A DNA stretch of 64,000 nucleotides, taken from Scyliorhinus canicula (Eukaryota). The notes below the pieces were generated by a model, which made no database searches, was not told the origin of the DNA, and saw nothing but the letters and a program-made list of their open reading frames with translations. Each line of letters begins with the position of its first letter. The first letter of the stretch is position 1. A program made the position numbers and the translations under genes. The stretch is taken from contig NC_052158.1 of NCBI RefSeq assembly GCF_902713615.1, forward strand, positions 39,485,729-39,549,728. The letters run 5' to 3'. Shown one piece after another: positions 28,414 through 61,905 of the stretch.

Positions 28414-28660
28414 GAATCTCCAGGGCTGTTTTTTTCCAAGTGTTGAAGTGTCAATTACAAGGAGGCACAGTTTCAAGGTGAGAGGGTGAAAGTTTAAGGG
28501 AGATGTGCGGGGTAAGTGGTAGGTGCCTGGAATGTGCTGCCAGAAGATGTGGTGGGAGCAGGCACATATTAGTGACGCTTTTTATACAAACGGTCATCTG
28601 CTGATAAATATTTGTCTTAAACTCCCTCACTTCCTGTCTGCTCCGGCCCAGAGACAAAAG

Positions 28661-34230: not shown

Positions 34231-34266
34231 TGAATTAAGAAGCTTCCGGAACAGGGACATCAGATG
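34231..34266 (-). CDS. MHC class I-like gene, second cytoplasmic exon (36 nt; T-SDVPVPEAS*), stop at 34237-34235
   Basis: TTTTGTTATTATTTTCTCAG acceptor, GTAAGT donor, phase 1 matching the previous exon. Confidence 0.7.
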
Positions 34267-37300: not shown

Positions 37301-40300
37301 TGCAGTGTGAGTGAGTGGAGGGTGACAGAGTGCAGTGTGAGGGAGTGGAGGGTGAGAGTGCAGTGTGAGGGAGTGGAAGATGAGAGAGTGCACTGCGAGG
37401 GAGTGGAGGGTGAGTGAGTGCAGTGTAAGGGAGTGGAGGGTGAGAGAGTGCAGTGTGAGGGAGTGGAGGGTGGGAGAGTGCAGTGTGAGGGAGTGGAGGG
37501 TGAGAGAGTGCAGTGTGAGGGAGTGGAGGGTGAGTGAGTGCTCTGTGGGAGTGGAGGGTGGGAGAGTGCAGTGTGAGGGAGTGGAGGGTGAGAGAGAGCT
37601 GTGTGAGGGTGTGGAGGGTGAGAGTGCACTGTGAGGGAGTGAAGGGTGAGTGAGTGCAGTGCGACGGAGTGGAGGATGAGTGAGTGCAGTGTGAGGGAGT
37701 GGAGGGTGGGAGAGTGTACTGTGAGGGTGTGGAGTGTGGGAGAGTGCAGTGTGAGTGAGTGGAGGGTGAGAGAGTGCACTGTGAGGGAATGGAGGGTGGG
37801 AGAGTGCACTGTGAGGGAGTGGAGGGTGAGAGAGTGCAGTGTGTGGGAGTGGAGGGTGAGTGAGTGCAGTGAGGGAGATTGGAGGGTGAGAGAGTGCAGG
37901 GTGAGGGAGTGGAGGGTGAGTGAGTGCAGTGCGACGGAGTGGAGGATGAGTGAGTGCAGTGTGAGGGAGTGGAGGGTGGGAGAGTGCACTGTGAGGGAGT
38001 GGAGGGTGAGAGAGTGCAGTGTGTGGGAGTGGAGGGTGAGTGAGTGCAGTGAGGGAGATTGGAGGGTGAGAGAGTGCAGGGTGAGGGAGTGGAGGGTGAG
38101 TGAGTGCAGTGCGACGGAGTGGAGGATGAGTGAGTGCAGTGTGAGGGAGTGGAGGGTGGGAGAGTGCACTGTGAGGGAGTGGAAGGTGAGAGAGTGCAGT
38201 GTGAGGGAGTGGAGGGTGAGTGAGTGCAGTGAGGGAGATTGGAGGGTGAGAGAGTGCAGGGTGAGGGAGTGGAGGATGAGTGAGTGCAGTGTGAGGGAGT
38301 GGAGGGTGGGAGAGTGCACTGTGAGGGAGTGGAGGGTGAGCGATTTCACTCTGAGGGAGTGGAGGGTGAGAGAGTGCAGTGTGTGTGAGTGGAGGGTGAG
38401 AGAGTGCAGAGTGAGGGAGTGGAGGGTGAGAGAGTGCACTGCGAGGGAGTGGAGGGTGTGAGAGTGCAGTGTGAGGGAGTGGAGGGTGAGAGAGTACAGT
38501 GTGAGGGAGTGGAGGGTGAGAGAGTGCAGTGTGAGGGAGTGGAGGGTGAGAGAGTTCAGTGTGAGGGAGTGGAGGGTGAGCGAGTGCAGTGTGAGGGAGT
38601 GGAGGGTGAGAGAGTTCAGTGTGAGGGAGTGGAGGGTGAGTGAGTGCACTGTGAGGGAGTGGAGGGTGAGAGAGTGCAGTGTGAGGAGTGGAGGTGAGAG
38701 AGTGCACTGTGAGGGAGTGGAGGGTGAGCGAGTGGAGGGTGAGAGATTGCACTGTGAGGGAGTGGAGTGTGAGGCAGTGGAGTGTGAGGGAGTGGAGGGT
38801 GAGAGAGTGCAGTGTGAGGGAGTCGAGGATGAGAGAGTGCTTTGTGAGGGAGTGGACGGTGAGAGAGTGCAGTGTGAAGGAGTGGAGGGTGAGAGAGTGC
38901 AGTGTGAGGGAGTGGAGGGTGAGAGTGTGCAGTGTGAGGGAGTGGAGGGTGAGAGTGCACTGTGAGGGAGTGCAGGTGAGAGAGTGCACTGTGAGGGAGT
39001 GGAGTGTGAGAGAGTGGAGGGTGAGAGAGTGCAGTGTGCGGAGTGGAGGGTGAGCGAGTGCAGTGTGCGGAGTGGAGGGTGAGCGAGTGCAGTGTGAGGG
39101 AGTGGAGGTGAGAGAGTGCACTGTGAGGGAGTGGAGGGTGAGCGAGTGCAGTGTGCGGAGTGGAGGGTGAGAGTGCACTGTGAGGGAGTGGAGGGTGAGA
39201 GAGTGCAGTGTGAGGGAGTGGAGGGTGAGCGAGTGCAGTGTGAGGGTGGAGGGTGAGAGAGTGCACTGTGAGGGAGTGGAGGGTAGAGAGTGCACTGTGA
39301 GGGAGTGGAGGGAGAGAGTGCAGTGTGAGGGAGTGGAGGGTGAGCGTGCAGTGTGAGGGAGTGGAGGGTGAGAGAGTGCACTGTGAGGGAGTGGAGGTGA
39401 GAGTGCACTGTGAGGGAGTGGAGGGTGGAGAGTGCACTGCGAGGGAGTAGGGTGGAGAGTTCAGTGGTAGTGAGTGATGAGCGAGTGCACTGTGAGGGAG
39501 TGGAGGGTGAGAGAGTGCACTGTGAGGGAGTGGAAGGTGAGAGTGTGCACTGCGAGGGAGTGGAGTGTGGGAGAGTGCACTGTGAGGGTGTGGAGGGTGA
39601 GAGTGCTGTGTGAGGGAGTGAAGGGTGAGTGAGTGCAGTGCGACGGAGTGGAGGATGAGTGAGTGCAGTGTGAGGGAGTGGAGGGTGGGAGAGTGTACTG
39701 TGAGGGTGTGGAGTGTGGGAGAGTGCAGTGTGAGGGAGTGGAGGGTGAGAGAGTGCACTGTGAGTGAGTGGAGGGTGAGAGAGTGCACTGTGAGGGAATG
39801 GAGGGTGAGAGAGTGCATTGTGAGGGAATGGAGGGTGAGGGAGTGCAGTGTGAGGGAGTGGAGGGTGAGAGAGTGCACTGTGAGGGAATGGAGGGTGAGG
39901 GAGTGCAGTGTGAGGGAGTGGAGGGTGAGAGAGTGCAGTGTGAGGGAGTAGAGTGGGAGAGAGTGCACTGTGAGAGAGTGGAGGGTGAGAGAGTGCACTG
40001 TGAGGGTGGAGGGTGAGCGAGTGAAGTGTGAGGGAGTGGAGGGTGAGCAAGTGCAGTGAGGGTGTGGAGGGTGAGAGAGTGCACTGCGAGGGAGTGGAGG
40101 GTGAGCGATTTCACTCTGAGGGAGTGGAGGGTGAGAGAGTGCAGTGTGAGTGAGTGGAGGGTGAGAGAGTGCAGAGTGAGGGAGTGGAGGTGAGAGAGTG
40201 CACTGCGAGGGAGTGGAGGGTGTGAGAGTGCAGTGTGAGGGAGTGGAGGGTGAGAGAGTGCAGTGTGAGGGAGTGGAGGGTGAGAGAGTACAGTGTGAGG

Positions 40301-41640
40301 GAGTGGAGGGTGAGAGAGTGCAGTGTGAGGGAGTGGAGGGTGAGAGAGTGCAGTGCGAGGGAGTGGACGATGAGTGAGTGCAGTGTGAGGGAGTGGAGGG
40401 TGAGAGAGTGCAGTGTGACGGAGTGGAGCATGAGTGAGTGCACTGTGAGGGAGTGGAGGGTGAGAGAGTGCAGTGTGAGGGAGTGGAGGGTGAGAGAGTG
40501 CACTGTGAGGGAGTGGAGGGTGAGCGAGTGGAGGGTGAGAGATTGCACTGTGAGGGAGTGGAGTGTGAGGCAGTGGAGTGTGAGGGAGTGGAGGGTGAGA
40601 GAGTGCAGTGTGAGGGAGTCGAGGATGAGAGAGTGCTTTGTGAGGGAGTGGACGGTGAGAGAGTGCATTGTGAGGGAGTGCAGGGTGAGAGTGTGCAGTG
40701 TGAGGGAGTGGAGGGTGAGAGTGCACTGTGAGGGAGTGGAGGGTGAGAGAGTGCACTGTGAGGGAGTGGAGGGTGAGAGAGTGCACTGTGAGGGAGTGGA
40801 GTGTGAGAGAGTGGAGGGTGAGAGAGTGCAGTGTGCGGAGTGGAGGGTGAGAGAGTGCACTGTGAGGGAGTGGAGGGTGAGAGAGTACACTGTGCGGGAG
40901 TGGAGGGTGAGCGAGTGCAGTGTGCGGAGTGGAGGGTGAGAGAGTGCACTGTGAGGGAGTGGAGTGTGAGAGAGTGGAGGGTGAGAGAGTGCAGTGTGCG
41001 GAGTGGAGGGTGAGAGAGTGCACTGTGAGGGAGTGGAGGGTGAGAGAGTACACTGTGAGGGAGTGGAGGGTGAGCGAGTGCAGTGTGTGGGAGTGGAGGG
41101 TGAGAGAGGCAGTGTGAGGGAGTGGAGGGTGGGAGAGTGCAGTGTGAGGGAGTGGAGGGTGAGAGTGTGCGGAGTGGAGGGTGAGAGTGTGCAGTGTGCG
41201 GAGTGGAGGGTGAGAGTGTGCAGTGTGAGGGAGTGGGGGGTGAGAGTACACTGTGAGGGAGTGGAGGGTGAGCGAGTGCACTGTGAGGGAGTGGAGGGTG
41301 AGAGAGTGCACTGTGAGGGAGTGGAGGGTGAGTGAGTGCAGTGTGAGGGTACACTGTGAGAGAGTGCAGTGTGAGGGATTGGAGTGAGAGCGAGTGCATT
41401 GTGAGGGAGTGGAGGGTGAGAGAGTGCACTGTGAGAGAGTGGAGGGTGAGCGAGTGCACTGTGAGGGAGTGGAGGGTGAGAGAGTGCACTGTGAGGGAGT
41501 GGAGGGTGAGAGAGTGCACTGTGAGGGAGTGGAGGGTGAGAGAGTGCACTGTGAGGGAGTGGAGGGTGAGAGAGTGCAGTGTGAGGGAGTGGAGGGTGAG
41601 AGAGTGCAGTGTGAGGGAGTGGAGGGTGAGAGAGTGAAGT
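34399..41640. repeat. 30-bp G/purine-rich minisatellite, about 240 copies, degenerating toward 42000
   Basis: Unit GTGAGGGAGTGGAGGGTGAGAGAGTGCA(C/G)T; 180-bp higher-order blocks visible at 37921 and 38101. Confidence 0.97.
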
Positions 41641-42246
41641 GCGAAGGACCTGGATGGTGAGGGAGGGGTGGCTGAGGGAATTTGGGGTGGAGTGGAGGGT
41701 TAGAGAGTGGAGGCAAGGGAATGGACGTTGAAGGAATGGAGGGTGAGGAAGTGGTGGATGATGGAGTGGATAGTAAGAGAGTGGAGGGTGAGGGAGTGGA
41801 GGGCAAGGGAGTCAAGGGCGAGGAAAAGTGAGGGAAAGAGTCGAAGAGGAAGCAGTGGAGGGTGTGGGAATGGAGAGTGAGGAAGTAGAGGATGAGGGAG
41901 TGCTGGGTGTTGGAGTGGACAGTGAGAGGGTAGAGGGTGAGTGAGTGGAGGGTTATGGAGATGGAGTGAAGGTGGAGAGAGTAGAGGCTGAGGGAGAGAG
42001 CTAAGATGATGAGAAATGTCTTCTCTCTGATATTTGTGAATCTTTGGAACTGTTTCTCCAACTGATTCTGGATGATCAGGCAGTGAGAACGGTCCGCACT
42101 GGGATCCAGCGATTCTGGAGCACTGAGGGGCAGCAAGGAAACTGGGAATGATGTAGTAAAGAAGAATTGGAATCGAGTTGAAGCAAAATCCCTGAAAATC
42201 ACTGAAGGAAACCATTCTGCCCATCTAGCTGTGCTGCCCCTTTGAG

Positions 42247-45200
42247 AGAACATAAGAACATAAGAACATAAGAACTAGGAGCAGGAGTAGGCCATCTGGC
42301 ACCTCGAGCCTGCTCCGCCATTCAATTAGATCATGGCTGATCTTTTGTGGACTCAGCTCCACTTTCCGGCCCGAACACCATAACCCTTAATCCCTTTATT
42401 CTTCAAAAAACTATCTATCTTTACCTTAAAAACATGTAATGAAGGAGCCTCAACTGCTTCACTGGGCAAGGAATTCCATAGATTCACAACCCTTTGGGTG
42501 AAGAAGTTCCTCCTAAACTCAGTTCTAAATCTACTTCCCCTTATTTTGAGGCTATGCCCCCTAGTTCTGCTGTCACCCGCCAGTGGAAACAACCTGCCCG
42601 CATCTATCCTATCTATTCCCTTCATAATTTTAAATGTTTCTATAAGATCCCCCCTCATCCTTCTAAATTCCAACGAGTACAGTCCCAGTCTACTCAACCT
42701 CTCCTCATAATCCAACCCCTTCAGCTCTGGGATTAACCTAGTGAATCTCCTCTGCACACCCTCCAGCGCCAGTATGTCCTTTCTCAAGTAAGGAGACCAA
42801 AACTAAACACAATACTCCAGGTGTGGCCGCACTAACACCTTATACAATTGCAACATAACCTCCCTAGTCTTAAACTCCATCCCTCTAGCAATGAAGGACA
42901 AAATTCCATTTGCCTTCTTAATCACCTGTTGCACTTGTAAACCAACCTTCTGTGACTCATGCACTAGCACACCCAAGTCTCTCTGAACAGCGGCATGCTT
43001 TAATATTTTATCGTTTAAATAATAATCCCGTTTGCTGTTATTCCTACCAAAATGGATAACCTCACATTTGTCAACATTCTATTCCATCTGCCAGACCCGA
43101 GCCCATTCACTTAACCTATCCAAATCCCTCTGCAGACTTCCAGTATCCTCTGCACTTTTCGCTTTACCACTCATCTTAGTGTCATCTGCAAACTTGGACA
43201 CATTGCCCTTGGTCCCCAACTCCAAATCATCAATGTAAATTGTGAACAATTGTGGGCCCAACACGGATCCCTGAGGGACACCACTAGCTACTGATTGCCA
43301 ACCAGAGAAACACCCATTTATCCCAACTCTTTGCTTTCTATTAATTAACCAATCCTCTATCCATGCTACTACTTTACCCTTAATGCCATGCATCTTTATC
43401 TTATGCAGCAACCTTTTGTGTGGCACCTTGTCAAAGGCTTTCTGGAAATCCAGATATACCATATCCATCGGCTCCCCGTTATCTACTGCACTGGTAATGT
43501 CCTCAAAAAATTCCACTAAATTAGTTAGGCACGACCTGCCTTTTACGAACCCATGCTGCGTCTGCCCAATGGGACAATTTCTATCCAGATGCCTCGCAAT
43601 TTCTTCCTTGATGATAGATTCCAGCATCTTCCCTATTACCGAAGTTAAACTCACTGGCCTATAATTTCCTGCTTTCTGCCTACCTCCTTTTTTAAACAGT
43701 GGCGTCACGTTTGCTAATTTCCAATCCACCGGGACCACCCCAGAGTCTAGTGAATTTCGGTAAATTATCACTAGTGCATCTGCAATTTCCCTAGCCATCT
43801 CTTTTAGCACTCTGGGATGCATTCCATCAGGGCCAGGAGACTTGTCTACCTTTAGCCCCATTAGCTTGCCCATCACTCCCTCCTTAGTGATAACAATCCT
43901 CTCAAGGTCCTCACCTGTCATAGCCTCATTTCTATCAGTCGCTGGCATGTTATTTGTGTCTTCCACTGTGAAGACCGACCCAAAAAACCTGTTCAGTTCC
44001 TCAGCCATTTCCTCATTTCCCATTATTAAAACTCCCTTCTCATCCTCTAAAGGACCAATATTTACCTTAGCCACTGTTTTTTGTCTTATATATTTGTAAA
44101 AACTTTTACTGTCTGTTTTTATATTCTGAGCAAGTTTACTCTCATACTCTATCTTACTCTTCTTTATAGCTTTTTTAGTAGCTTTCTGTTGCCCCCTAAA
44201 GATTTCCCAGTCCTCTAATCTCCCAGCAATCTTTGCCACTTTATATGATTTTTCCTTCAATTTGATACTCTCCCTTATTTCCTTAGATATCCACGGTCGA
44301 TTTTCCCTCTTTCTTCCGTCCTTCCTTTTTGTTGGTATAAACCTTTGCTGAGCACTGTGAAAAATCGCTTGGAAGGTTCTCCACTGTTCCTCAACTGTTC
44401 CACCATAAAGTCTTAGCTCCCAGTCTACCTTAGCTAGTTCTTCTCTCATCCCCTTGTAATCTCCTTTGTTTAAACACAAAACACTAGTATTTGATTTTAC
44501 TTTCTCACCCTCCATCTGTATTTTAAATTCCACCATATTGTGATCGCTCCTTCCGAGAGGATCCCTAACTATGAGATCATGAATCAATCCTGTCTCATTA
44601 CACAGGACAAGATCTAGGACCGCTTGTTCCCTCGTAGGTTCCATTACATACTGTTCTAAGAAACTATCGCGGATACATTCTATAAACTCCTCCTCACGGT
44701 TGCCTTGACCGACCTGGTTAAACCAATCGACATGTAGATTAAAATCCCCCATGATAACTGCTGTACCATTTCTACATGCATCAGTTATTTCTTTGTTTAT
44801 TGCCTGCCCCACCATAACGTTACTATTTGGTGGCCGATAGACTACTCCTATCAGTGACTTTTTCGTCTTACTATTCCTGATTTCCACCCAAATGGATTCA
44901 ACCTTATCCTCCATAGCACCGATTTCATCCCTTACTATTGCCCGGATGTCATCCTTAAATAACAGAGCAACACCACCTCCCTTACCATCCACTCTGTCCT
45001 TCCGAATAGTTTGATACCCTCGGATATTTAACTCCCAGTCGTGACCATCCTTTAACCATGTTTCAGTAATGGCCACTAAATCATAGTCATTTACGATGAT
45101 TTGTGCCACCAACTCATTTACTTTATTCCGAATACTACGAGCATTCAGGTAAAGTACACTTATGTTGGTTTTTTTACCTCTGTTTTGAATCTTAACATCT

Positions 45201-46335
45201 CCAGTTTTATTCCTTTTGTTATTACTGGGCCTATTCACTGTGCTCCCCTCAGTCACTGTACCTTGTACTGTCGCCCTTATGGATTTCTGACTATGTCTTC
45301 TCTGCCTTGCACTTTTCCCCTTACTTCCTTTTGTTTCTGTCCCTGTTTTACTACCTTCCAACTTCCAGCATTGGTTCCCATCCCCCTGCCACATTAGTTT
45401 AAACCCTCCCCAACAGCTCTAGAAAACACCCCCCCTAGGACATCGGTTCCAGTCCTGCCCAAGTGCAGACTGTCCGGTTTGTACTGGTCCCACCTCCCCC
45501 AGAACCGGTCCCAATGCCCCAGGAATTTGAATCCCTCCCTCTTGCACCATCTCTCGAGCCACGCATTCATCCTATCTATCCTGACATTCCTACTCTGACT
45601 CGCTCGTGGCACTGGTAGCAATCCTGAGATTACTACCTTTGAGGTCCTACTTTTTAGTTTAACTCCTAACTCCCTGAATTCCGCTTGTAGGACCTCATCC
45701 CGTTTTTTACCTATATCGTTGGTGCCTATGTGCACCACGACAGCTGGCTGTTCACCCTCCCCCCCCCAGAATGTCCTGCAGCCGCTCCGAGAAATCCTTG
45801 ACCCTTGCACCAGGGAGGCAACATACCATCCTGGAGTCTCGATTGCGTCCACAGAACCGCCTGTCTATTCCCCTTACGATCGAGTCCCCTATCACTATAG
45901 CCCTGCCATTTTTCTTCCTGCCCTGCTGTGCAGCAGAGCCAGCCACGGTGCCATGAACCTGGCTGCTGCTGCCTTCCCCTGGTGAGCCATCTCCCTCAAC
46001 AGTATCCAAAGCGGTGTATCTGTTTTGCAGGGAGATGACCGCAGGGGACACCTGCACTGCCTTCCTACTCTTGCTCTTTCTTTTGGTCACCCATTTTCTA
46101 TCTCCCTCAGTAACCTTCACCTGCGGTGTGACCAACTCGCTAAACGTGCTATCCACGACCTCCTCAGCATCGCGGATGCTCCAAAGTGAGTCCATCCGCA
46201 GCTCCAGAGCCGTCAAGCGGTCTAACAAGAGCTGCAACTGAACACACTTCTTGCACGTGAAGGAGCCAGGGACAGTGGACGTGTCCCTGAGCTCCCACAT
46301 CGCACACGAGGAGCATGACACGGGTCTGGGATCTC
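42247..46335 (-). mobile_element. Near full-length CR1 LINE (ORF1 zinc-finger/SGNH esterase, ORF2 APE endonuclease + RT), 5'UTR missing, inactivated
   Basis: ORF1 SCSSCAMW...CKKC, IGDSIVRG, VHIGTNDI. ORF2 YLNARS, AITETWL, GDFN, SDH, YLDFQKAFDKVPH, FADD. Nonsense TAG at 43081-43079 and 42805-42803; ORF1 frameshift at C-run 45759-45767; (TTCTTATG)3 tail. Confidence 0.96.
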
Positions 46336-46974: not shown

Positions 46975-47007
46975 TGTGAGCTGTTGTGTAGATCACACTC
47001 GGTGAAT
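46975..47007 (-). CDS. MHC class I-like gene, first cytoplasmic exon (33 nt; D-SPSVIYTTAH)
   Basis: TTTTACTTCTGCAG acceptor, GTAAGT donor, phase 1/1; 33-nt Tyr-containing exon as in classical class I exon 6. Confidence 0.82.
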
Positions 47008-47327: not shown

Positions 47328-48860
47328 CAGTGTCCTGTACTCCCAGTACTGGGGATTCCCCCACACTCACTCTCTCCCCTCAGTTCTACATTCCCCTCTC
47401 TCTCCCCTCTCAGTGTCCTGTACTCCCAGTACTGGGGATTCTCCCCCACTCACTCTGTCCCCTCAGTTCTACATTCCCCTCTCTCTCTCTCTCTCCCCTC
47501 TCAGTGTCCTGTACTCCCAGTACTGGGGATTCCCCCACACTCACTCTGTCCCCTCAGTTCTACATTCCCCTCCCTCTCCCCTCTCAATGTCCTGTACTCC
47601 CAGTACTGGGGATTTCCCCACACTCACTCTGTCCCCTCAGTTCTACATTCCCCTCTCTCTCTCTCTAGCCCCTCTCAGTGTCCTGTACTCCCAGTACTGG
47701 GGATTCCCCCACACTCACTCTGTCCCCTCAGTTCTACATTCCCCTCTCTCTCCCCTCTCAGTGTCCTGTACTCCCAGTACTGGGGATTCCCCCCACACTC
47801 ACTCTGTCCCCTCAGTTCTACATTCCCCTCTCTCTCCCCTCTCAGTGTCCTGTACGCCCAGTACTGGGGATTCCCCCACACTCACTCTGTCCCCTCAGTT
47901 CTACATTCCCCTCTCTCTCCCCTCTCAGTGTCCTGTACTCCCAGTACTGGGGATTCCCCCCACACTCACTCTGTCCCCTCAGTTCTACATTCCCCTCTCT
48001 CTCCCCTCTCAGTGTCCTGTACTCCCAGTACTGGGGATTCCCCCACACTCACTCTGTCCCCTCAGTTCTACATTCCCCTCTCTCTCTCCCCTCTCAGTGC
48101 CCTGTACTCCCAGTACTGGGGATTCCCCCCACACTCACTCTGTCCCCTCAGTTCTACATTCCCCTCTCTCTCTCTCTCCCCTCTCAGTGTCCTGTACGCC
48201 CAGTACTGGGGATTCCCCCCACACTCACTCTGTCCCCTCAGTTCTACATTCCCCTCTCTCTCTCTCTCCCCTCTCAGTGTCCTGTACTCCCAGTACTGGG
48301 GATTCCCCCACACTCACTCTGTCCCCTCAGTTCTACATTCCCCTCTCTCTCTCTCTCCCCTCTCAGTGTCCTGTACTCCCAGTACTGGGGATTCCGCCCA
48401 CACTCACTCTGTCCCCTCAGTTCTACATTCCCCTCTCTCTCTCTCCCCTCTCAGTGTCCTGTACTCCCAGTACTGGGGATTCACCCATACTCACTCTGTC
48501 CCCTCAGTTCTACATTCCCCTCTCTCTCTCCTCTCAGTGTCCTGTACTCCCAGTACTGGGGATCCCCCCACACTCACTCTGTCCCCTCAGTTCTACATTC
48601 CCCTCTCTCTCCTCTCTCAGTGTCCTGTACTCCCAGTACTGGGGATTCCCCCCACACTCACTCTGTCCCCTCAGTTCTACATTCCCCTCTCTCTCCCCTC
48701 TCGGTGTACTGTACTCCCAGTACTGGGGATTCCCCCACACTCACTCTGTCCCCTCAGTTCTACATTCCCCTCTCTCTCCCCTCTCAGTGTCCTGTACTCC
48801 CAGTACTGGGAATCCCTCCACACTCACTCTGTCCCCTCAGTTCCACATTCCCCTCTCTCT
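47328..48860 (-). repeat. ~83-bp minisatellite, about 18 copies, in the TM-cytoplasmic intron
   Basis: Same unit as 27590-28413; begins about 10 nt after the TM donor. Confidence 0.97.
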
Positions 48861-48869
48861 GATACTTAC

Positions 48870-48989
48870 CTCTCTGATGTCTTTTCCAGATGATTATTCC
48901 AATTATTCCGAACATAACAGCCAGTACAATGATGACTGATCCAATTATAATTTCAAGATGGGTGCGTCCCCCACTGTTTCCTGGGAATT
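48870..48989 (-). CDS. MHC class I-like gene, connecting peptide/transmembrane exon (120 nt)
   Basis: ATCTGTTTCAG acceptor, GTAAGT donor, phase 1/1; E-FPGNSGGRTHLEIIIGSVIIVLAVMFGIIGIIIWKRHQR (hydrophobic span followed by a basic stop-transfer). Confidence 0.9.
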
Positions 48990-52125: not shown

Positions 52126-52404
52126 CCCACTGATGGAGCTTGGGCTCTGCCAGGCTGCTGTGTTCAATTTGACAGGAGTATTGATCCTCATCCCCAGCAT
52201 TTATTTCAATCTCTTTCTGGATCTGATGGCTCCCATCGTGGTTCGGTCGAAGCCCCGAGGATTGTGTCTCAGACATTACCTCTCCATTCCTTAGCCAGGT
52301 CACCTCGATGTCTACAGGATAAAACCCAGTAACCAGGCAGGAGAGAGTGAGCGGCTTGTACTGACTATTGGCCTCACTTCTGGAGATGAAGACTTCAGGC
52401 TGAA
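52126..52404 (-). CDS. MHC class I-like gene, alpha3 (Ig C1) exon (279 nt)
   Basis: TTTCCCATTACAG acceptor, GTAAG donor; LSCLVTGFYPVDIEVTW...PNHDGSHQ...YSCQIEHSSL with both Ig cysteines and the Trp. Confidence 0.96.
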
Positions 52405-52520: not shown

Positions 52521-52796
52521 CTTTCCGTCCAAAATATTCCTTTCCAGCTTGTAAATATCTGTTCAAATGTTGAACAAATATTCCTTGAAGATATGTTTCC
52601 CAGTAGCTGTTCCAGGATTGATCCGAATCCCATTTCTCTTTAGTCTTCACTGCGATGTGATTGGTTGCGACCCATCTCTTTGTGTCTGGCTCTAAACTAA
52701 TAAAGTCCTTTCCATCAAATCCAAACCTCATCGATCTCCGAATGGAGCCGTCTTCAGTGACCTCGACATACCACATCCATTGAAGAGTGTGGATTC
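52521..52796 (-). CDS. MHC class I-like gene, alpha2 exon (276 nt)
   Basis: TTGTTCACTGACAG acceptor, GT donor at 52520-52519; canonical 92-codon size; G-IHTLQ...FGFDGKDFISL...W...TKEKW...YLQG...YLQAGKE. Confidence 0.95.
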
Positions 52797-53348: not shown

Positions 53349-56300
53349 TGCAGTGTCCCAGGGGTCAGTGCTGGGGGAATGAGTGCAGTGTCCCAGGGGT
53401 CAGTGCTGGGGGATGGACTGAGTGCAGTGTCCCAGGGGTCAGTGCTGGGGGACTGAGTGCAGTGTCCCAGGGGTCAGTGCTGGGAGATGGACTGAGTGCA
53501 GTGTCCCAGGGGTCAGTGCTGGGGGACTGAGTGCCGTGTCCCAGGGGTCAGTGCTGGGAGATTGACTGAGTGCAGTGTCCCAGGGGCCAGTGCTGGGGGA
53601 TGAGTGCAGTGTCCCGGGGGACTGAGTGCAGTGTCCCAGGGGTCAGTGCTGGGGGACTGAGTGCAGTGTCCCAGGGGTCAGTGCTGGGGGACTGAGTGCA
53701 GTGTCCCAGGGGTCAGTGCTGGGATACTGAGTGCAGTGTCCCAGGGGTCAGTGCTGGGTGATGGACTGAGTGCAGTGAGCCAGGGGTCAGGGCTGGGATA
53801 CTGAGTGGAGTGTCCCAGGGGTCAGTGCTGGGGGACTGAGTGCAGTGACCCAGGGGTCAGTGCTGGGGGATGAGTGCAGTGAGCCAGGGGTCAGTGCTGG
53901 GATACTGAGTGGAGTGTCCCAGGGGTCAGTGCTGGGGGACTGAGTGCAGTGTCCCAGGGGTCAGTGCTGGGGGACTGAGTGCAGTGTCCCAGGGGTCAGT
54001 GCTGGGGGACTGAGTGCAGTGTCCCAGGGGTCAGTGCTGGGGGACTGAGTGCAGTGTCCCAGGGGTCAGTGCTGGGAGATGGACTGAGTGCAATGGCCCA
54101 GGGGCCAGTGCTGGGGGACTGAGTGCAGTGACCCAGGGATCAGTGCCGGGGGACAGAGTGCAGTGTCCCAGGGGTCAGTGCTGGGGGACTGAGTGCAATG
54201 ACCCAGGGGCCAGTGCTGGGAGATCGACTGAGTGCAATGACCCAGGGGTCAGTGCTGGGGGTCTGAGTGCAGTGCCCCAGGGGTCAGTGCTGGCAGATGG
54301 ACTGAGTGCAGTGTCCCAGGGGTCAGTGCTGGGGGTCTGAGTGCAGTGACCCAGGGGCCAGTGCTGGGAGATGGACTGAGTGCAGTGTCCCAGGGGTCAG
54401 TGCTGGGGGTCTGAGTGCAGTGCCCCAGGGGTCAGTGCTGGGGGACAGAGTGCAGTGTCCGAGTGGTCAGGGCAGTGGGACTGTGCAGTGTCCCAGGGGT
54501 CAGTGCTGGGGGACTGAGTGCAGTGTCCCAGGGGTCAGTCCTGGGGGACTGAGTGCAGTGATCCAGGGGTCAGTGCAGGGGGACTGAGTGCAGTGTCCCA
54601 GGGGTCAGTGCTGGGGGACTGAGTGCAGTGACCCAGGGGTCAGTGCTGGGGGACTGAGTGCAGTGTCCCAGGGGTCAGTGCTGGGGGACTGAGTGCAGTG
54701 TTCCAGGGGTCAGTGCTGGGGGACTGAGTGCAGTGTCCCAGGGGTCAGTGCTGGGGGACTGAGTGCAGTGTTCCAGGGGTCAGTGCTGGGGGACTGAGTG
54801 CAGTGTCCCAGGGGTCAGTGCTGGGGGACTGAGTGCAGTGTTCCAGGGGTCAGTGCTGGGGGACTGAGTGCAGTGTCCCAGGGGTCAGTGCTGGGGGACT
54901 GAGTGCAGTGTCCCAGGGGTCAGTGCTGGGGGATGGACTGAGTGCAGTGTCCCAGGGGTCAGTGCTGGGGGACTGTGCAGTGTCCCAGGGGTCAGTGCTG
55001 GGGGTCTGAGTGCAGTGCCCCAGGGGTCAGTGCTGGGGGACAGAGTGCAGTGTCCGAGGGGTCAGGGCAGGGGGACTGAGTGCAGTGTCCCAGGGGTCAG
55101 TGCTGGGGGACTGAGTGCAGTGTCCCAGGGGTCAGTGCTGGGGGACTGAGTGCAGTGACCCAGGGGTCAGTGCTGGGGGACTGAGTGCAGTGTCCCAGGG
55201 GTCAGTGCTGGGGGACTGAGTGCAGTGTCCCAGGGGTCAGTGCTGGGGGACTGAGTGCAGTGTCCCAGGGGTCAGTGCTGGGGGACTGAGTGCAGTGTCC
55301 TAGGGGTCAGTGCTGGGGGATGGACTGAGTGCAGTGTCCCAGGGGTCAGTGCTGGGGGACTGAGTGCAGTGTCCCAGGGGTCAGTGCTGGGGGATGGGCT
55401 GAGTGCAGTGTCCCAGGGGTCAGTGCTGGGGGATGGACTGAGTGCAGTGTCCCAGGGGTCAGTGCTGGAGGATGGACTGAGTGCAGTGCCCCAGGGGTCA
55501 GTGCTGGGGGACTGAGTGCAGTGTCCCAGGGGTCAGTGCTGGGAGACTGAGTGCAGTGTCGCAGGGGTCAGTGCTGTGGGACTGAGTGCCGTGTCCCAGG
55601 GGTCAGTGCTGGGGGACTGAGTGCAGTGTCCCAGGGGTCAGTGCTGGGGGACTGAGTGCAGTGTCCCAGGGGTCAGTGCTGGGGGACTGAGTGCAGTGTC
55701 CCAGGGGTCAGTGCTGGGGGACTGAGTGCAGTGTCCCAGGGGCCAGTGCTGGGGGATGAGTGCAGTGTCCCAGGGGTCAGTGCTGGGGGACTGAGTGCAG
55801 TGTCCCAGGGGTCAGTGCTGGGAGACTGAGTGCAGTGTCCCAGGGGTCAGTGCTGGGAGATGGACTGAGTGCAGTGACCCAGGGGTCAGTGCTGGGGGAC
55901 TGAGTGCAGTGTCCCAGGGGTCAGTGCTGGGGGATGAGTGCAGTGAGCCAGGGGTCAGTGCTGGGATACTGAGTGGAGTGTCCCAGGGGTCAGTGCTGGG
56001 GGACTGAGTGCAGTGTCCCAGGGGTCAGTGCTGGGGGACTGAGTGCAGTGTCCCAGGGGTCAGTGCTGGGGGACTGAGTGCAGTGTCCCAGGGGTCAGTG
56101 CTGGGGGACTGAGTGCAGTGTCCCAGGGGTCAGTGCTGGGAGATGGACTGAGTGCAATGGCCCAGGGGCCAGTGCTGGGGGACTGAGTGCAGTGACCCAG
56201 GGATCAGTGCCGGGGGACAGAGTGCAATGACCCAGGGGCCAGTGCTGGGAGATCGACTGAGTGCAATGACCCAGGGGTCAGTGCTGGGGGTCTGAGTGCA

Positions 56301-59300
56301 GTGCCCCAGGGGTCAGTGCTGGCAGATGGACTGAGTGCAGTGTCCCAGGGGTCAGTGCTGGGGGTCTGAGTGCAGTGACCCAGGGGCCAGTGCTGGGAGA
56401 TGGACTGAGTGCAGTGTTTCCAGGGGTCAGTGCTGGGGGTCTGAGTGCAGTGCCCCAGGGGTCAGTGCTGGGGGACAGAGTGCAGTGCCCCAGGGGTCAG
56501 TGCTGGGGGACAGAGTGCAGTGTCCGAGTGGTCAGGGCAGGGGGACTGTGCAGTGTCCCAGGGGTCAGTGCTGGGGGACTGAGTGCAGTGTCCCAGGGGT
56601 CAGTCCTGGGGAACTGAGTGCAGTGATCCAGGGGTCAGTGCAGGGGGACTGAGTGCAGTGTCCCAGGGGTCAGTGCTGGGGGACTGAGTGCAGTGACCCA
56701 GGGGTCAGTGCTGGGGGACTGAGTGCAGTGTCCCAGGGGTCAGTGCTGGGGTACTGAGTGCAGTGTTCCAGGGGTCAGTGCTGGGGGACTGAGTGCAGTG
56801 TCCCAGGGGTCAGTGCTGGGGGACTGAGTGCAGTGTTCCAGGGGTCAGTGCTGGGGGACTGAGTGCAGTGTCCCAGGGGTCAGTGCTGGGGTACTGAGTG
56901 CAGTGTTCCAGGGGTCAGTGCTGGGGGACTGAGTGCAGTGTCCCAGGGGTCAGTGCTGGGGGACTGAGTGCAGTGTCCCAGGGGTCAGTGCTGGCGGATG
57001 GACAGAGTGCAGTGTCCCAGGGGTCAGTGCTGGGGGACTGTGCAGTGTCCCAGGGGTCAGTGCTGGGGGTCTGAGTGCAGTGCCCCAGGGGTCAGTGCTG
57101 GGGGACAGAGTGCAGTGTCCGAGTGGTCAGGGCAGGGGGACTGAGTGCAGTGTCCCAGGGGTCAGTGCTGGGGGACTGAGTGCAGTGTCCCAGGGGTCAG
57201 TGCTGGGGGACTGAGTGCAGTGACCCAGGGGTCAGTGCTGGGGGACTGAGTGCAGTGTCCCAGGGGTCAGTGCTGGGGGACTGAGTGCAGTGTCCCAGGG
57301 GTCAGTGCTGGGGGACTGAGTGCAGTGTCCCAGGGGTCAGTGCTGGGGGACTGAGTGCAGTGTCCTAGGGGTCAGTGCTGGGGGATGGACTGAGTGCAGT
57401 GTCCCAGGGGTCAGTGCTGGGGGACTGAGTGCAGTGTCCCAGGGGTCAGTGCTGGGGGATGGGCTGAGTGCAGTGTCCCAGGGGTCAGTGCTGGGGGATG
57501 GACTGAGTGCAGTGTCCCAGGGGTCAGTGCTGGAGGATGGACTGAGTGCAGTGCCCCAGGGGTCAGTGCTGGGGGACTGAGTGCAGTGTCGCAGGGGTCA
57601 GTGCTGTGGGACTGAGTGCCGTGTCCCAGGGGTCAGTGCTGGGGGACTGAGTGCAGTGCCCCAGGGGTCAGTGCTGGGGGACTGAGTGCAGTGTCCCAGG
57701 GGTCAGTGCTGGGAGACTGAGTGCAGTGTCGCAGGGGTCAGTGCTGTGGGACTGAGTGCCGTGTCCCAGGGGTCAGTGCTGGGGGACTGAGTGCAGTGCC
57801 CCAGGGGTCAGTGCTGGGGGACTGAGTGCAGTGTCCCAGGGGTCAGTGCTGGGGGACTGAGTGCAGTGTCCCAGGGGTCAGTGCTGGGGGACTGAGTGCA
57901 GTGTCCCAGGGGCCAGTGCTGGGGGATGAGTGCAGTGTCCCAGGGGTCAGTGCTGGGGGACTGAGTGCAGTGTCCCAGGGGTCAGTGCTGGGATACTGAG
58001 TGCAGTGTCCCAGGGGTCAGTGCTGGGTGATGGACTGAGTGCAGTGACCCAGGGGTCAGTGCTGGGGGACTGAGTGCAGTGTCCCAGGGGTCAGTGCTGG
58101 GGGATGAGTGCAGTGAGCCAGGGGTCAGTGCTGGGATACTGAGTGGAGTGTCCCAGGGGTCAGTGCTGGGGGACTGAGTGCAGTGTCCCAGGGGTCAGTG
58201 CTGGGGGACTGAGTGCAGTGTCCCAGGGGTCAGTGCTGGGGGACTGAGTGCAGTGTCCCAGGGGTCAGTGCTGGGGGACTGAGTGCAGTGTCCCAGGGGT
58301 CAGTGCTGGGAGATGGACTGAGTGCAATGGCCCAGGGGCCAGTGCTGGGGGACTGAGTGCAGTGACCCAGGGATCAGTGCCGGGGGACAGAGAGCAATGA
58401 CCCAGGGGCCAGTGCTGGGAGATCGACTGAGTGCAATGACCCAGGGGTCAGTGCTGGGGGTCTGAGTGCAGTGCCCCAGGGGTCAGTGCTGGCAGATGGA
58501 CTGAGTGCAGTGTCCCAGGGGTCAGTGCTGGGGGTCTGAGTGCAGTGACCCAGGGGCCAGTGCTGGGAGATGGACTGAGTGCAGTGTCCCAGGGGTCAGT
58601 GCTGGGGGTCTGAGTGCAGTGCCCCAGGGGTCAGTGCTGGGGGACAGAGTGCAGTGTCCGAGTGGTCAGGGCAGGGGGACTGTGCAGTGTCCCAGGGGTC
58701 AGTGCTGGGGGACTGAGTGCAGTGTCCCAGGGGTCAGTCCTGGGGAACTGAGTGCAGTGATCCAGGGGTCAGTGCAGGGGGACTGAGTGCAGTGTCCCAG
58801 GGGTCAGTGCTGGGGGACTGAGTGCAGTGACCCAGGGGTCAGTGCTGGGGGACTGAGTGCAGTGTCCCAGGGGTCAGTGCTGGGGTACTGAGTGCAGTGT
58901 CCCAGGGGTCAGTGCTGGGGGACTGAGTGCAGTGTCCCAGGGGTCACTGCTGGGGGACTGAGTGCAGTGTTCCAGGGGTCAGTGCTGGGGGACTGAGTGC
59001 AGTGTCCCAGGGGTCAGTGCTGGGGGACTGAGTGCAGTGTTCCAGGGGTCAGTGCTGGGGGACTGAGTGCAGTGTCCCAGGGGTCAGTGCTGGGGGACTG
59101 AGTGCAGTGTTCCAGGGGTCAGTGCTGGGGGACTGAGTGCAGTGTCCCAGGGGTCAGTGCTGGCGGATGGACTGAGTGCAATGACCCAGGGGTCAGTGCT
59201 GTGAGATGGACTGAGTGCAGTGTCACAGGGGTCAGTGCTGGGGGACAGAGTGCAGTGACTCAGGGGTCAGTGCTGGGGGACTGAGTGCAGTGTCCCAGGG

Positions 59301-61805
59301 GTCAGTGCTGGGGACTGAGTGCAGTGTCCCAGGGGTCAGTGCAGGGGAATGGACTGACTGCAGTGTCCCAGGGGTCAGTGCTGGGGGACTGTGCAGTGTC
59401 CCAGGGGTCAGTGCTGGGGGTCTGAGTGCAGTGCCCCAGGGGTCAGTGCTGGGGGACAGAGTGCAGTGTCCGAGTGGTCAGGGCAGGGGGACTGTGCAGT
59501 GTCCCAGGGGGTCAGTGCTGGGAGACTGAGTGCAGTGTCCCAGGGGTCAGTGCTGGGGAACTGAGTGCAGTGTCCCAGGGGTCAGTGCTGGGGGACTGAG
59601 TGCAGTGACCCAGGGGTCAGTGCTGGGGGACTGAGTGCAGTGTCCCAGGGGTCAGTGCTGGGGGACAGAGTGCAGTGTTCCAGGGGTCAGTGCTGGGAGA
59701 TGGACTGAGTGCAGTGTCCCAGGGGTCAGTGCTGGGGGACTGAGTGCAGTGTCCCAGGGGTCAGTGCTGGGGGACTGAGTGCAGTGTCCTAGGGGTCAGT
59801 ACTGGGGATGGACTGAGTGCAGTGTCCCAGGGGTCAGTGCTGGGGGACTGAGTGCAGTGTCCCAGGGGTCAGTGCTGGGAGACTGAGTGCAGTGTCGCAG
59901 GGGTCAGTGCTGTGGGACTGAGTGCCGTGTCCCAGGGGTCAGTGCTGGGGGACTGAGTGCAGCGTCCCAGGGGTCAGTGCTGGGGGACTGAGTGCAGTGT
60001 CCCAGGGGTCAGTGCTGGGGGACTGAGTGCAGTGTCCCACGGGTCAGTGCTGGGTGATGGACTGAGTGCAGTGACCCAGGGGTCAGTGCTGGGGGATGAG
60101 TGCAGTGAGCCAGGGGTCAGTGCTGGGGGACTGAGTGGAGTGTCCCAGGGGTCAGTGCTGGGGGACTGAGTGCAGTGTCCCAGGGGTCAGTGCTGGGATA
60201 CTGAGTGCAGTGTCCCAGGGGTCAGTGCTGGGATACTGAGTGCAGTGTCCCAGGGGTCAGTGCTGGGGGACAAAATGCAGTGTCCCAGGGGTCATTGCTG
60301 GGAGATGGACTGAGTGCAATGACCCAGGGGCCAGTGCTGGGGGACTGAGTGCAGTGACCCAGGGGTCAGTGCCGGGGGACAGAGTGCAGTGTCCCAGGGG
60401 TCAGTGCTGGGGGACTGAGTGCAGTGACCCAGGGGTCAGTGCCGGGGGACAGAGTGCAGTGACCCAGGGGCCAGTGCTGGGAGATGGACTGAGTGCAATG
60501 ACCCAGGGGTCAGTGCTGGGGGTCTGAGTGCAGTGCCCCAGGGGTCAGTGCTGGGAGATGGACTGAGTGCAGTGTCCCAGGGGTCAGTGCTGGGGGTCTG
60601 AGTGCAGTGTCCCAGGGGTCAGTGCTGGGGGACAGAGTGCAGTGTTCCAGGGGTCAGTGCTGGGAGATGGACTGAGTGCAGTGTTCCAGGGGTCAGTGCT
60701 GGGGGACTGAGTGCAGTGTCCTAGGGGTCAGTACTGGGGATGGACTGAGTGCAGTGTCCCAGGGGTCAGTGCTGGGGGACTGAGTGCAGTGTCCCAGGGG
60801 TCAGTGCTGGGGGATGGACTGAGTGCAGTGTCCCAGGGGTCAGTGCTGGAGGATGGACTGAGTGCAGTGCCCCAGGGGTCAGTGCTGGGGGACTGAGTGC
60901 AGTGTCCCAGGGGTCAGTGCTGGGAGACTGAGTGCAGTGTCGCAGGGGTCAGTGCTGGGGGACTGAGTGCAGTGCCCCAGGGGTCAGTGCTGTGGGACTG
61001 AGTGCCGTGTCCCAGGGGTCAGTGCTGGGGGACTGAGTGCAGTGCCCCAGGGGTCAGTGCTGGGGGACTGAGTGCAGTGTCCCAGGGGTCAGTGCTGGGG
61101 GACTGTGTGCAGTGTCCCAGGGGTCAGTGCTGGGGGACTGAGTGCAGTGTCCCAGGGGCCAGTGCTGGGGGATGAGTGCAGTGTCCCGGGGGACTGAGTG
61201 CAGTGTCCCAGGGGTCAGTGCTGGGGGACTGAGTGCAGTGTCCCAGGGGTCAGTGCTGGGATACTGAGTGCAGTGTCCCAGGGGTCAGTGCTGGGGGACA
61301 AAATGCAGTGTCCCAGGGGTCAGTGCTGGGTGATGGACTGAGTGCAGTGACCCAGGGGTCAGTGCTGGGGGACTGAGTGCAGTGTCCCAGGGGTCAGTGC
61401 TGGGGGATGAGTGCAGTGTCCCAGGGGTCAGTGCTGGGGGACTGAGTGCAGTGTCCCAGGGGTCAGTGCTGGGGGACTGAGTGCAGTGTCCCAGGGGTCA
61501 GTGCTGGGGGACTGAGTGCAGTGTCCCAGGGGTCAGTGCTGGGGGACAAAATGCAGTGTCCCAGGGGTCAGTGCTGGGATACTGAGTGCAGTGTCCCAGG
61601 GGTCAGTGCTGGGGGACAAAATGCAGTGTCCCAGGGGTCAGTGCTGGGAGATGGACTGAGTGCAATGGCCCAGGGGCCAGTGCTGGGGGACTGAGTGCAG
61701 TGACCCAGGGATCAGTGCCGGGGGACAGAGTGCAGTGTCCCAGGGGTCAGTGCTGGGGGATGGACTGTGCAGTGTCCCAGGGGTCAGTGCTGGGGGACTG
61801 AGTGC
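53349..61805 (+). repeat. 35-bp (35/39-bp variants) satellite, about 235 copies, with ~2.1-kb higher-order structure, upstream of the alpha2 exon
   Basis: Unit GTGCAGTGTCCCAGGGGTCAGTGCTGGGGGACTGA; variant patterns recur at a 2065-bp offset (54868/56933, 55255/57320, 55329/57394). Confidence 0.98.
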
Positions 61806-61905
61806 NNNNNNNNNNNNNNNNNNNNNNNNNNNNNNNNNNNNNNNNNNNNNNNNNNNNNNNNNNNNNNNNNNNNNNNNNNNNNNNNNNNNNNNNNNNNNNN
61901 NNNNN
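61806..61905. other. Assembly gap (100 N)
   Basis: Run of N; array orientation flips across it. Confidence 1.

What the first reader, a model, noticed from the sequence alone, without database searches (positions are those of the whole stretch)
52521..52796. Class I alpha2 domain lacking both disulfide cysteines but retaining peptide-anchor residues
Seen, aligned by eye to HLA-A2 numbering: C101 is V (QWMWYVEV) and C164 is F (YLQGIFVQHL), and there is no Cys anywhere in alpha2. T143, K146, W147, Y159, Y171, F123 and the b2m contacts Q96, D119, G120, D122 are kept, and alpha3, TM and tail are intact. Established: the C101-C164 bond is near-invariant in class I. Paired replacement by hydrophobic residues suggests an adapted fold rather than decay. 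Whether this belongs to a described shark lineage (UAA, UBA, UCA, UDA, UEA) or a new one cannot be decided from sequence alone.
Basis: partly seen in the sequence, partly recalled or inferred. Interest (0 to 1): 0.82.

Follow-up and report, generated by a model that had tools for sequence, protein, structure and literature searches.

The report
Cysteine-less shark nonclassical MHC class I exon
The exon is real and belongs to a catshark nonclassical MHC class I gene from a large, shark-only, already mapped gene family (most likely UEA) in which every member lost the alpha2 disulfide long ago, so the feature is an old family trait and not a new discovery or a decaying gene.

Summary
**Observation:** confirmed. 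Window 52796-52521 (minus strand) is a 276-nt, phase-1 class I alpha2 exon. It has V at position 101, F at 164 and no Cys. T143, K146, W147, Y159, Y171 and the b2m contacts are kept. The alpha3, TM and tail exons are intact.

**Identity:** the genome is Scyliorhinus canicula chr13. The gene is RefSeq LOC119976118, already labelled MHC-Ib in Verissimo et al. 2023.

**The family:** it has at least 12 copies between UDA and b2m/brd2. The published map places the multicopy UEA lineage there.
- Of about 100 family proteins from 13 shark species, none has C101. C164 survives unpaired in 9.
- G100 and W167 are also always lost.
- The family is one clade (support 100).
- C101 was lost once; C164 changed at least 5 times.
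- Alpha2 dN/dS is about 0.47.
- An intact paralog models as a normal class I fold (pLDDT 92.5).
- It docks catshark b2m canonically (0.89 against control 0.00).

**Caveats:**
- The window copy has no leader or alpha1 exon in the assembly. Its intron-2 minisatellite runs into a gap at the centre of an inverted duplication.
- I could not read the UEA paper or obtain a labelled UEA sequence, so the UEA name rests on map position and distribution.

**Earlier scan:** it had already flagged the mirror copy (s1-253784).

**Verdict:** a known lineage, of modest interest.

The parts
52521..52796 (-). Alpha2 exon (276 nt, phase 1). V at position 101, F at position 164, no Cys.
   Evidence: Identical in the mirror copy.
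52126..52404 (-). Alpha3 (Ig C1-set) exon with both Ig cysteines. About 100% identical among at least 7 paralogs.
   Evidence: PF07654 hit, E = 2.4e-17.
48870..48989 (-). Connecting-peptide and transmembrane exon.
46975..47007 (-). Cytoplasmic exon 1 (DSPSVIYTTAH).
34235..34266 (-). Cytoplasmic exon 2 with the stop codon (SDVPVPEAS*).
   Evidence: Matches P0241.
53349..61805 (.). 35-nt minisatellite filling intron 2 upstream of alpha2. In intact paralogs the alpha1 exon lies just 5' of this array. Here the array runs into a gap.
61806..61905 (.). 100-N assembly gap at the centre of the inverted duplication.
61906..64000 (.). The same minisatellite in inverted orientation. It leads to the mirror gene LOC119976117.

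Best explanation
**What it is.** The exon is the alpha2 domain of LOC119976118, one copy of a shark-specific multigene nonclassical MHC class I family. The family lies in the catshark MHC between UDA and b2m/brd2 and is most probably the published UEA lineage.

**How the state arose.** The ancestor of the family lost C101 once; it became V and has stayed fixed. That left C164 without a partner. C164 then drifted to L, F, Y, S, G, D and other residues, and remains as a lone Cys in a few genes. G100 and W167 were lost in the same family. In classical class I these four residues form one structural unit: the G100 kink lifts the disulfide, which orients W167 to close the N-terminal end of the groove.

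**How it probably works.** Shown by models here: the family keeps the class I fold, the alpha3 domain and the b2m interface. Shown by sequence counts: it mostly keeps the C-terminal anchor triad T143/K146/W147. Inferred: the N-terminal end of the groove and the pinned stretch of the alpha2 helix are remodelled, and that stretch is also the most variable part among paralogs. Inferred further: these are b2m-associated ligand-binding or receptor-binding class Ib molecules whose alpha2 helix is held by hydrophobic packing instead of a disulfide.

**This copy.** The window copy lacks its leader and alpha1 exons in the assembly. Its function cannot be assumed.
For: **Paralogs**
- At least 12 paralogous alpha2 exons lie on chr13.
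- All of them lack both cysteines.

**Identity**
- A hit protein lies on a contig whose length equals that of C13, which identifies the genome as S. canicula.
- P0241 is the RefSeq model of this gene.
- The gene is listed as MHC-Ib in the supplement of PMC10751288. The flanking markers are col11a2, rxrb, hsd17b8 and slc39a7 on one side and b2m and brd2 on the other.

**Homologs and residue counts**
- Homologs occur in 13 shark species, including the Squalomorphii. None comes from rays or chimaeras.
- Counts at positions 100, 101, 164, 167 and the anchor positions are.

**Phylogeny**
- The family is monophyletic (SH-aLRT 100, stem length 0.86).
- C101 changed once on the tree and C164 at least 5 times.

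**Selection**
- dN/dS is 0.22-0.78 across paralog pairs.
- The most variable segment is helix positions 159-175.

**Structure**
- The AF2 model of an intact paralog has pLDDT 92.5 and pTM 0.82.
- Its nearest structures are chicken BF2 (TM 0.92) and shark UAA 6lup (TM 0.86).
- The complex with catshark b2m scores ipSAE 0.89 against a best control of 0.00. That mark was reached by 51 of 78 solved complexes and 2 of 108 mismatched pairs. The three runs agree in at least 98% of contacts and the partner pLDDT is 92.
- The interface includes the Q96, G120, K121 and D122 equivalents.

**Expression**
- Exon-only word shares in small contig sets from several studies point to spliced transcripts.
- A partial processed pseudogene on chr1 joins alpha1 directly to alpha2.

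**Literature**
- The G100/C101-C164/W167 structural coupling is described in PMC8236899.
Against: - The UEA name is not tested by sequence. The defining paper (Almeida et al. 2021, PMC8454915) is not held, and no protein labelled UEA appeared in the searches.
- As I recall its abstract, UEA lacks the nine invariant residues. This family keeps K146 and W147 almost always, and T143 and Y171 mostly.
- AlphaFold and ESMFold do not sense disulfide loss. A class I/b2m pass can come from memory of solved complexes.
- No positive selection was seen on classical PBR-equivalent codons (0.32 against 0.50).
- The RNA evidence is indirect. The runs are only guessed to be RNA, and read laying was lost to a filter.
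- The window copy has no alpha1 or leader exon. Its RefSeq protein starts at a Met inside alpha2.
Confidence: 0.8

Rival explanations
1. The window copy itself is a 5'-truncated gene relic. A real palindromic duplication with its centre inside the intron-2 minisatellite removed the leader and alpha1 from both head-to-head copies. Any transcripts would encode no secreted class I chain.
For: - No alpha1 or leader exon exists for this copy or its mirror, although 9 other paralogs have one.
- The array is uninterrupted up to the gap.
- The arms differ by 0.3-4.6%, so this is not a foldback artefact.
- The RefSeq model starts inside alpha2.
Against: - All five remaining exons are open and are 100% conserved with the mirror copy.
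- The window-type alpha2 exon appears in exon-only form in contig sets from at least 3 studies, without its upstream flank. That suggests splicing from an upstream exon that is missing from the assembly.
- A 100-N gap sits exactly where alpha1 would be expected.
Confidence: 0.35
2. The inverted duplication is an assembly problem. The 59-kb stretch between the two gaps (2681-61805) is a retained alternative haplotype, or a misoriented contig, of the neighbouring locus. There is then really one complete gene, whose 5' end fell into the gap.
For: - The left arm is bounded by gaps at 2181-2680 and 61806-61905.
- It mirrors the adjacent sequence over about 50 kb.
- Both arms break inside the same long minisatellite.
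- MHC haplotypes can differ by about 1%.
Against: - Divergence reaches 3-4.6% without gaps at the outer end.
- The right-arm copy of the neighbouring SNTX-like gene is only a fragment.
- These two points fit an old paralogous duplication better than two alleles.
Confidence: 0.35
3. The family is a shark class Ib lineage distinct from the described UEA, that is, an undescribed lineage that shares the UDA-b2m interval.
For: - No sequence labelled UEA could be compared.
- The family keeps more anchor residues than my recollection of the UEA abstract suggests.
Against: - The published map names only UDA, UEA and the single-copy UFA in this interval. Only UEA is multicopy.
- These very loci are labelled MHC-Ib there.
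- The shark-only distribution, the large copy number and the hydrophobic replacements (Y7V, Y59F) match the description of UEA.
Confidence: 0.1
4. The missing cysteines are a private mutation, a sequencing error or pseudogene decay in this one copy.
For: None beyond the first impression.
Against: - All paralogs, and about 100 homologs in 13 species, lack C101.
- The state changed once, on the family stem.
- dN/dS is below 1.
Confidence: 0.02

Closest known systems
Shark UEA nonclassical class I lineage (Almeida et al. 2021, J Immunol 207:824; mapped in Verissimo et al. 2023)
   Same: - Multicopy.
- Sharks only.
- MHC-linked, next to UDA and b2m/brd2.
- Invariant peptide-terminus residues partly replaced by hydrophobic ones.
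- Sublineages with different grooves.
   Different: No difference was shown. Identity with published UEA sequences, and whether the paper already reports the loss of the alpha2 disulfide, could not be checked here.
Classical shark class I UAA (for example Triakis UAA; structure 6lup)
   Same: - Same exon plan, leader type and alpha2 length.
- Same alpha3 and b2m interface.
- T143/K146/W147 are present.
- The predicted fold matches at TM 0.86.
   Different: - UAA keeps G100, C101, C164, W167, Y7, Y59, R84 and Y159.
- It is a single or few-copy gene beside TAP and LMP.
- Identity to the family is only about 35%.
UDA (single-copy, ancient class Ib; the S. canicula gene at 39.16-39.24 Mb)
   Same: Same Ib cluster; it is the direct neighbour of the family.
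   Different: - UDA keeps both cysteines and all the anchors.
- It occurs in chimaeras too.
- It forms a separate clade.
Class I alpha1 and tetrapod/elasmobranch class II alpha1 domains, which lost the homologous C11-C74 pair (PMC8236899)
   Same: They are a precedent that an MHC groove domain can dispense with this ancestral disulfide.
   Different: Those domains rest on an Ig domain that stabilises them. The class I alpha2 disulfide sits in the part that has no Ig support, and the paper describes it as well conserved.
Xenopus XNC (mhc1-uba) multigene class Ib family
   Same: A large, diversified, oligomorphic class Ib family with conserved alpha3 and divergent grooves.
   Different: An independent origin. 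I did not test whether XNC keeps the alpha2 disulfide.

Membership tests
MHC class I heavy chain (Pfam MHC_I + C1-set) | Alpha1/alpha2 groove superdomain | tested here: met
   PF00129 matches P0241 with E = 2.1e-15 (alpha2 only) and the intact paralog P0194 with E = 4.9e-24. The AF2 model matches BF2 at TM 0.92.
MHC class I heavy chain (Pfam MHC_I + C1-set) | Alpha3 Ig C1 domain with its Cys pair, then a TM segment and a cytoplasmic tail | tested here: met
MHC class I heavy chain (Pfam MHC_I + C1-set) | C101-C164 disulfide in alpha2 | tested here: not met
   The window copy has V101 and F164. No C101 occurs in about 100 family proteins.
MHC class I heavy chain (Pfam MHC_I + C1-set) | Association with b2m | tested here: inconclusive
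   Model only: ipSAE 0.89 against a best control of 0.00, with a canonical interface. The pass may reflect memory of solved class I complexes.
MHC class I heavy chain (Pfam MHC_I + C1-set) | Leader and alpha1 exons present (for this window copy) | tested here: not met
   No alpha1 or leader exon is found near this copy or its mirror. The RefSeq model starts inside alpha2.
Classical class Ia (UAA) | Invariant peptide-terminus residues Y7, Y59, R/Y84, T143, K146, W147, Y159, Y171 | tested here: not met
   In the family Y7 is V, Y59 is F or Y, R84 is variable and Y159 is Y in only 19 of about 100. The window copy keeps the alpha2 subset.
Classical class Ia (UAA) | One or few loci tightly linked to TAP and LMP; high polymorphism | tested here: not met
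   At least 12 copies spread over 39.28-41.1 Mb in the Ib cluster. Polymorphism was not tested.
UEA lineage | Multicopy family in the Ib cluster bounded by col11a2/rxrb/hsd17b8/slc39a7 and b2m/brd2, together with UDA | tested here: met
   The UDA-like neighbour is L039, which resembles P0257.
UEA lineage | Present in sharks, not in rays or chimaeras | tested here: met
   Thirteen shark species, including Heptranchias and Pristiophorus. No batoid or holocephalan hit reaches 50% identity or more. This is limited by what the databases sample.
UEA lineage | Clusters with the published UEA sequences | not testable with these tools
   No labelled UEA protein was returned, and the paper is not held.

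The most novel reading that the evidence does not exclude
The joint, lineage-wide loss of G100, C101, C164 and W167, with T143/K146/W147 retained, has produced class I molecules of a distinct type. Their alpha2 helix is unpinned, and the N-terminal end of their groove is open or plastic. They would bind a ligand class that is anchored only at the C-terminal end, such as N-terminally extended peptides, lipopeptides or other hydrophobic ligands. Each paralog would tune the freed helix segment at positions 159-175. If the published UEA work did not analyse this, it is a new structural variant of the class I fold inside a known lineage.
Probability: 0.25. Interest if true: 0.6.

Novelty: already known. 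Interest (0 to 1): 0.3.

Why it matters
The alpha2 disulfide is one of the most conserved features of MHC groove domains. From my own knowledge of the mammalian literature, breaking it impairs class I assembly.

A whole gene family has done without it since before the split of the two main shark groups, while keeping the fold, b2m pairing and purifying selection. That makes the family a natural experiment in how the class I groove can be stabilised and remodelled.

The family is already published and this locus is already annotated. The value here is therefore a clearer description, not a discovery:
- The loss happened once and started with C101.
- It came together with the loss of G100 and W167.
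- The formerly pinned helix segment is where the paralogs differ most.

These points give concrete targets for structural and ligand work on UEA molecules.

Tried and rejected
I therefore have no read-level splice or 5' evidence.
- **Papers:** Almeida 2021 (PMC8454915 and by DOI) and Almeida 2020 (PMC7002201) are not held. Other papers gave no statement on UEA cysteines.
- **Lineage names:** cluster look-ups gave only automatic RefSeq names and no lineage labels.
- **Pfam genome scan:** it missed the family's divergent alpha1 exons. A family-specific protein query found them.
- **Positive selection:** the rough PBR against non-PBR dN/dS test showed none. I make no claim of diversifying selection.
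- **Foldback artefact:** rejected for the palindrome, because the arms differ by 0.3-4.6%.
- **Private mutation or sequencing error:** rejected.

Full report
**1.

On the minus strand, 52796-52521 is a 276-nt exon. It has an AG acceptor, a GT donor and phase 1. It encodes a class I alpha2 domain with no cysteine.

phmmer against PDB chains gives E = 2.5e-18 to chicken BF2. The two canonical cysteines of BF2 lie over V (in WMWYVEV) and F (in QGIFVQH). In this copy T143, K146, W147, Y159, Y171, F123, Q96, D119, G120 and D122 are all present.

The downstream exons are open:
- alpha3: 52404-52126
- TM: 48989-48870
- tail: 47007-46975 and 34266-34235

**2. Which gene it is**

The window is chr13:39485729-39549728 of a 4.2-Gb genome. 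A hit protein, XP_038671287.1 of Scyliorhinus canicula, lies on a contig of exactly the length of C13. The genome is therefore the catshark assembly sScyCan1.1.

The RefSeq protein XP_038672225.1 (P0241) matches the window exons residue for residue. It starts at a Met inside alpha2 and has no leader or alpha1.

The supplement of Verissimo et al. 2023 (PMC10751288) lists this locus, LOC119976118 at 39517788-39538521 on the minus strand, as MHC-Ib. It lists the mirror gene LOC119976117 the same way.

**3. The cysteine loss is a family trait**

At least 12 paralogous alpha2 exons lie between 35.9 and 41.1 Mb on chr13, and a partial processed copy lies on chr1. Every paralog lacks Cys at 101 and 164. 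The three neighbouring class I genes of other lineages, at 38.38, 38.53 and 39.23 Mb, keep both.

Homologs with at least 50% identity occur in 13 shark species. These include Heterodontus, Carcharodon, Cetorhinus, Rhincodon, Chiloscyllium, Hemiscyllium, Stegostoma, Mustelus, S. torazame, and the squalomorphs Heptranchias and Pristiophorus. Below them, identity drops to under 40% for UAA-like, UDA-like and UBA-like proteins.

Residue counts in about 100 family proteins:

| Position | State in the family |
|---|---|
| 101 | V (82), or A, I, L; never a genuine Cys. The single 'C' is an intron read-through in a mispredicted model |
| 164 | L, F, Y, S, G, D and others; an unpaired Cys in 9 |
| G100 | never G |
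| W167 | never W |

All 17 non-family proteins keep G100, C101 and C164, and 16 of the 17 keep W167.

On a maximum-likelihood tree the family is one clade, with SH-aLRT 100 and a stem length of 0.86. The C101 state changes once on that tree and the C164 state at least 5 times. C101 was therefore lost first and once, and the orphaned C164 was then replaced repeatedly.

**4. Not decay**

- All intact paralogs have open exons.
- Alpha2 dN/dS among eight catshark paralogs is 0.22-0.78, mean 0.47.
- Alpha3 exons are about 100% identical among at least 7 paralogs, while alpha2 exons are 76-92% identical and alpha1 exons 40-76%. This fits concerted evolution of the Ig domain with diversified groove domains.
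- The most variable alpha2 stretch is helix positions 159-175, the part that the disulfide pins in classical molecules. Classical PBR-equivalent codons show no excess of replacements (0.32 against 0.50).

**5. Fold and b2m**

An intact close paralog (P0194, 82% identical in alpha2) was modelled with an 85-row alignment. The model has pLDDT 92.5 and pTM 0.82. Its nearest solved structures are chicken BF2 (TM 0.92) and shark UAA 6lup (TM 0.86).

Paired with exon 2 of catshark b2m (L040:1604-1876), the complex scores ipSAE 0.89 against a best control of 0.00:
- That mark was reached by 51 of 78 solved complexes and 2 of 108 mismatched pairs.
- The three runs agree in at least 98% of contacts.
- The partner pLDDT is 92.
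- The interface contains the equivalents of Q96, G120, K121 and D122.

Class I/b2m complexes are abundant among solved structures. This result shows likeness, not proof of binding.

**6. Lineage**

The Ib cluster at 38.35-41.12 Mb is bounded by col11a2, rxrb, hsd17b8 and slc39a7 on one side (34.3-35.6 Mb). On the other side are b2m (41.36 Mb) and brd2 (41.46 Mb).

The paper states that this cluster holds single-copy UDA and multicopy UEA (plus UFA). It places UBA in a separate cluster between c4 and rxrb, which corresponds here to 32.1-32.4 Mb. A later review says the same.

The neighbour at 39.16-39.24 Mb is UDA-like. It groups with a nurse-shark nonclassical protein and with a chimaera protein.

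The cysteine-less multicopy family is therefore most probably UEA. I could not test this against labelled sequences or read the defining paper. Whether the cysteine loss is already described there is unknown to me; I think it likely.

**7. Mechanistic reading (inference)**

Wu et al. (PMC8236899) describe a coupled unit in classical class I:
- The G100 irregularity lifts the C101-C164 bridge.
- The bridge turns W167 upward, so that it blocks the N-terminal end of the groove.
- The bridge stabilises the part of the platform that has no Ig support.

This family has lost all four residues. It has also lost Y7 (to V) and mostly Y159. It keeps W147 and K146 almost always, and T143 and Y171 mostly.

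I infer a platform whose C-terminal pocket resembles the classical one, while its N-terminal end and the helix at 159-175 are remodelled and differ from gene to gene.

**8. The window copy is incomplete**

In intact paralogs the alpha1 exon sits just 5' of a 35-nt minisatellite that fills intron 2. In the window that array runs for 8.4 kb without interruption into a 100-N gap. It then continues in inverted orientation to the mirror gene.

- The window from about 7 kb to the gap is the inverted image of the next roughly 50 kb. Mismatch between the arms is 0.3-4.6%.
- The left arm is a 59-kb piece between two gaps.
- No alpha1 or leader exon belongs to either copy.

Either this is a real palindrome that truncated both genes, or the 5' exons are lost in the gap or a haplotig was misplaced. 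I cannot decide between these.

**9. Transcripts (indirect)**

Small contig sets from 11 studies hold 0.50-0.79 of the words of the alpha2-intron-alpha3 stretch. The exon-only ceiling there is about 0.71.

For alpha2 plus 454 nt of upstream flank, no set exceeds 0.35, which is the exon-only ceiling. Sets from three studies reach 0.25-0.35.

This fits spliced RNA that carries the window-type alpha2 exon without its upstream flank. The runs are only guessed to be RNA, and the one read-laying run was lost.

A partial processed pseudogene on chr1 joins alpha1 directly to alpha2. That is evidence that the family was transcribed and spliced in the past.

**10. Verdict**

The interpretation that this is an adapted state and not decay is right at the family level.

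The lineage is a published one and this gene is already annotated, so novelty is low. What remains of interest is the concerted loss of the G100-C101-C164-W167 unit and its likely effect on the groove.

The earlier scan had already flagged the mirror copy with the same observation (s1-253784).

Noticed in passing
window 53349-61805 and 61906-64000; L011:1960-7130: A 35-nt GC-rich minisatellite fills intron 2 (between alpha1 and alpha2) of every paralog examined; the alpha1-alpha2 distance ranges from 4.7 to 22 kb. A bamboo-shark model (P0004) reads through the same 'STDPW' repeat at the same place. The array therefore seems conserved across shark orders.
   Followed up: partly
window 47328-48860 and 27592-28423: Two intronic tandem repeats (units of 83 and 90 nt) carry GGGGATTCCCC, the class I enhancer-A type kappaB motif. 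It occurs 19 times, against 0.07 expected by chance. The earlier scan noted the same thing in the mirror copy (s1-253785).
   Followed up: partly
window 7034-10441 (+): An open 1135-aa single-exon ORF (within RefSeq LOC119975566). Its domains are SNTX-like MACPF, stonustoxin helical, thioredoxin-like, FN3 and a septin/AIG1-type GTPase. It looks like a perforin-like immune gene inside the MHC class Ib cluster. The right arm of the duplication holds only a fragment of it.
   Followed up: partly
window 52126-52404 versus L003, L006, L007, L008 and others: Alpha3 exons are 100% identical at the DNA level among at least 7 paralogs whose alpha2 exons differ by 8-24%. This indicates strong gene conversion or concerted evolution confined to the Ig exon.
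   Followed up: partly
G000:C1:23583314-23583899 (L025:815-1400): A partial processed pseudogene of the family lies on chromosome 1. Its alpha1, alpha2 and alpha3 pieces are contiguous but carry internal deletions and stop codons.
   Followed up: partly
window 2181-2680 and 61806-61905: Two assembly gaps bound a 59-kb piece that is the inverted image of the adjacent 50 kb. It is either a palindromic segmental duplication or a misplaced haplotig.
   Followed up: partly
P0197 and P0186 (paralogs at 39.37 and 40.09 Mb): RefSeq isoforms of intact paralogs skip the TM exon and join alpha3 directly to the cytoplasmic exon. These are predicted TM-less products.
   Followed up: no
window 42356-46333 (-) and 34399-41968: LINE-type reverse-transcriptase ORFs and a 7.5-kb array of a 15-nt repeat lie inside the 12.7-kb intron between the two cytoplasmic exons.
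   Followed up: no
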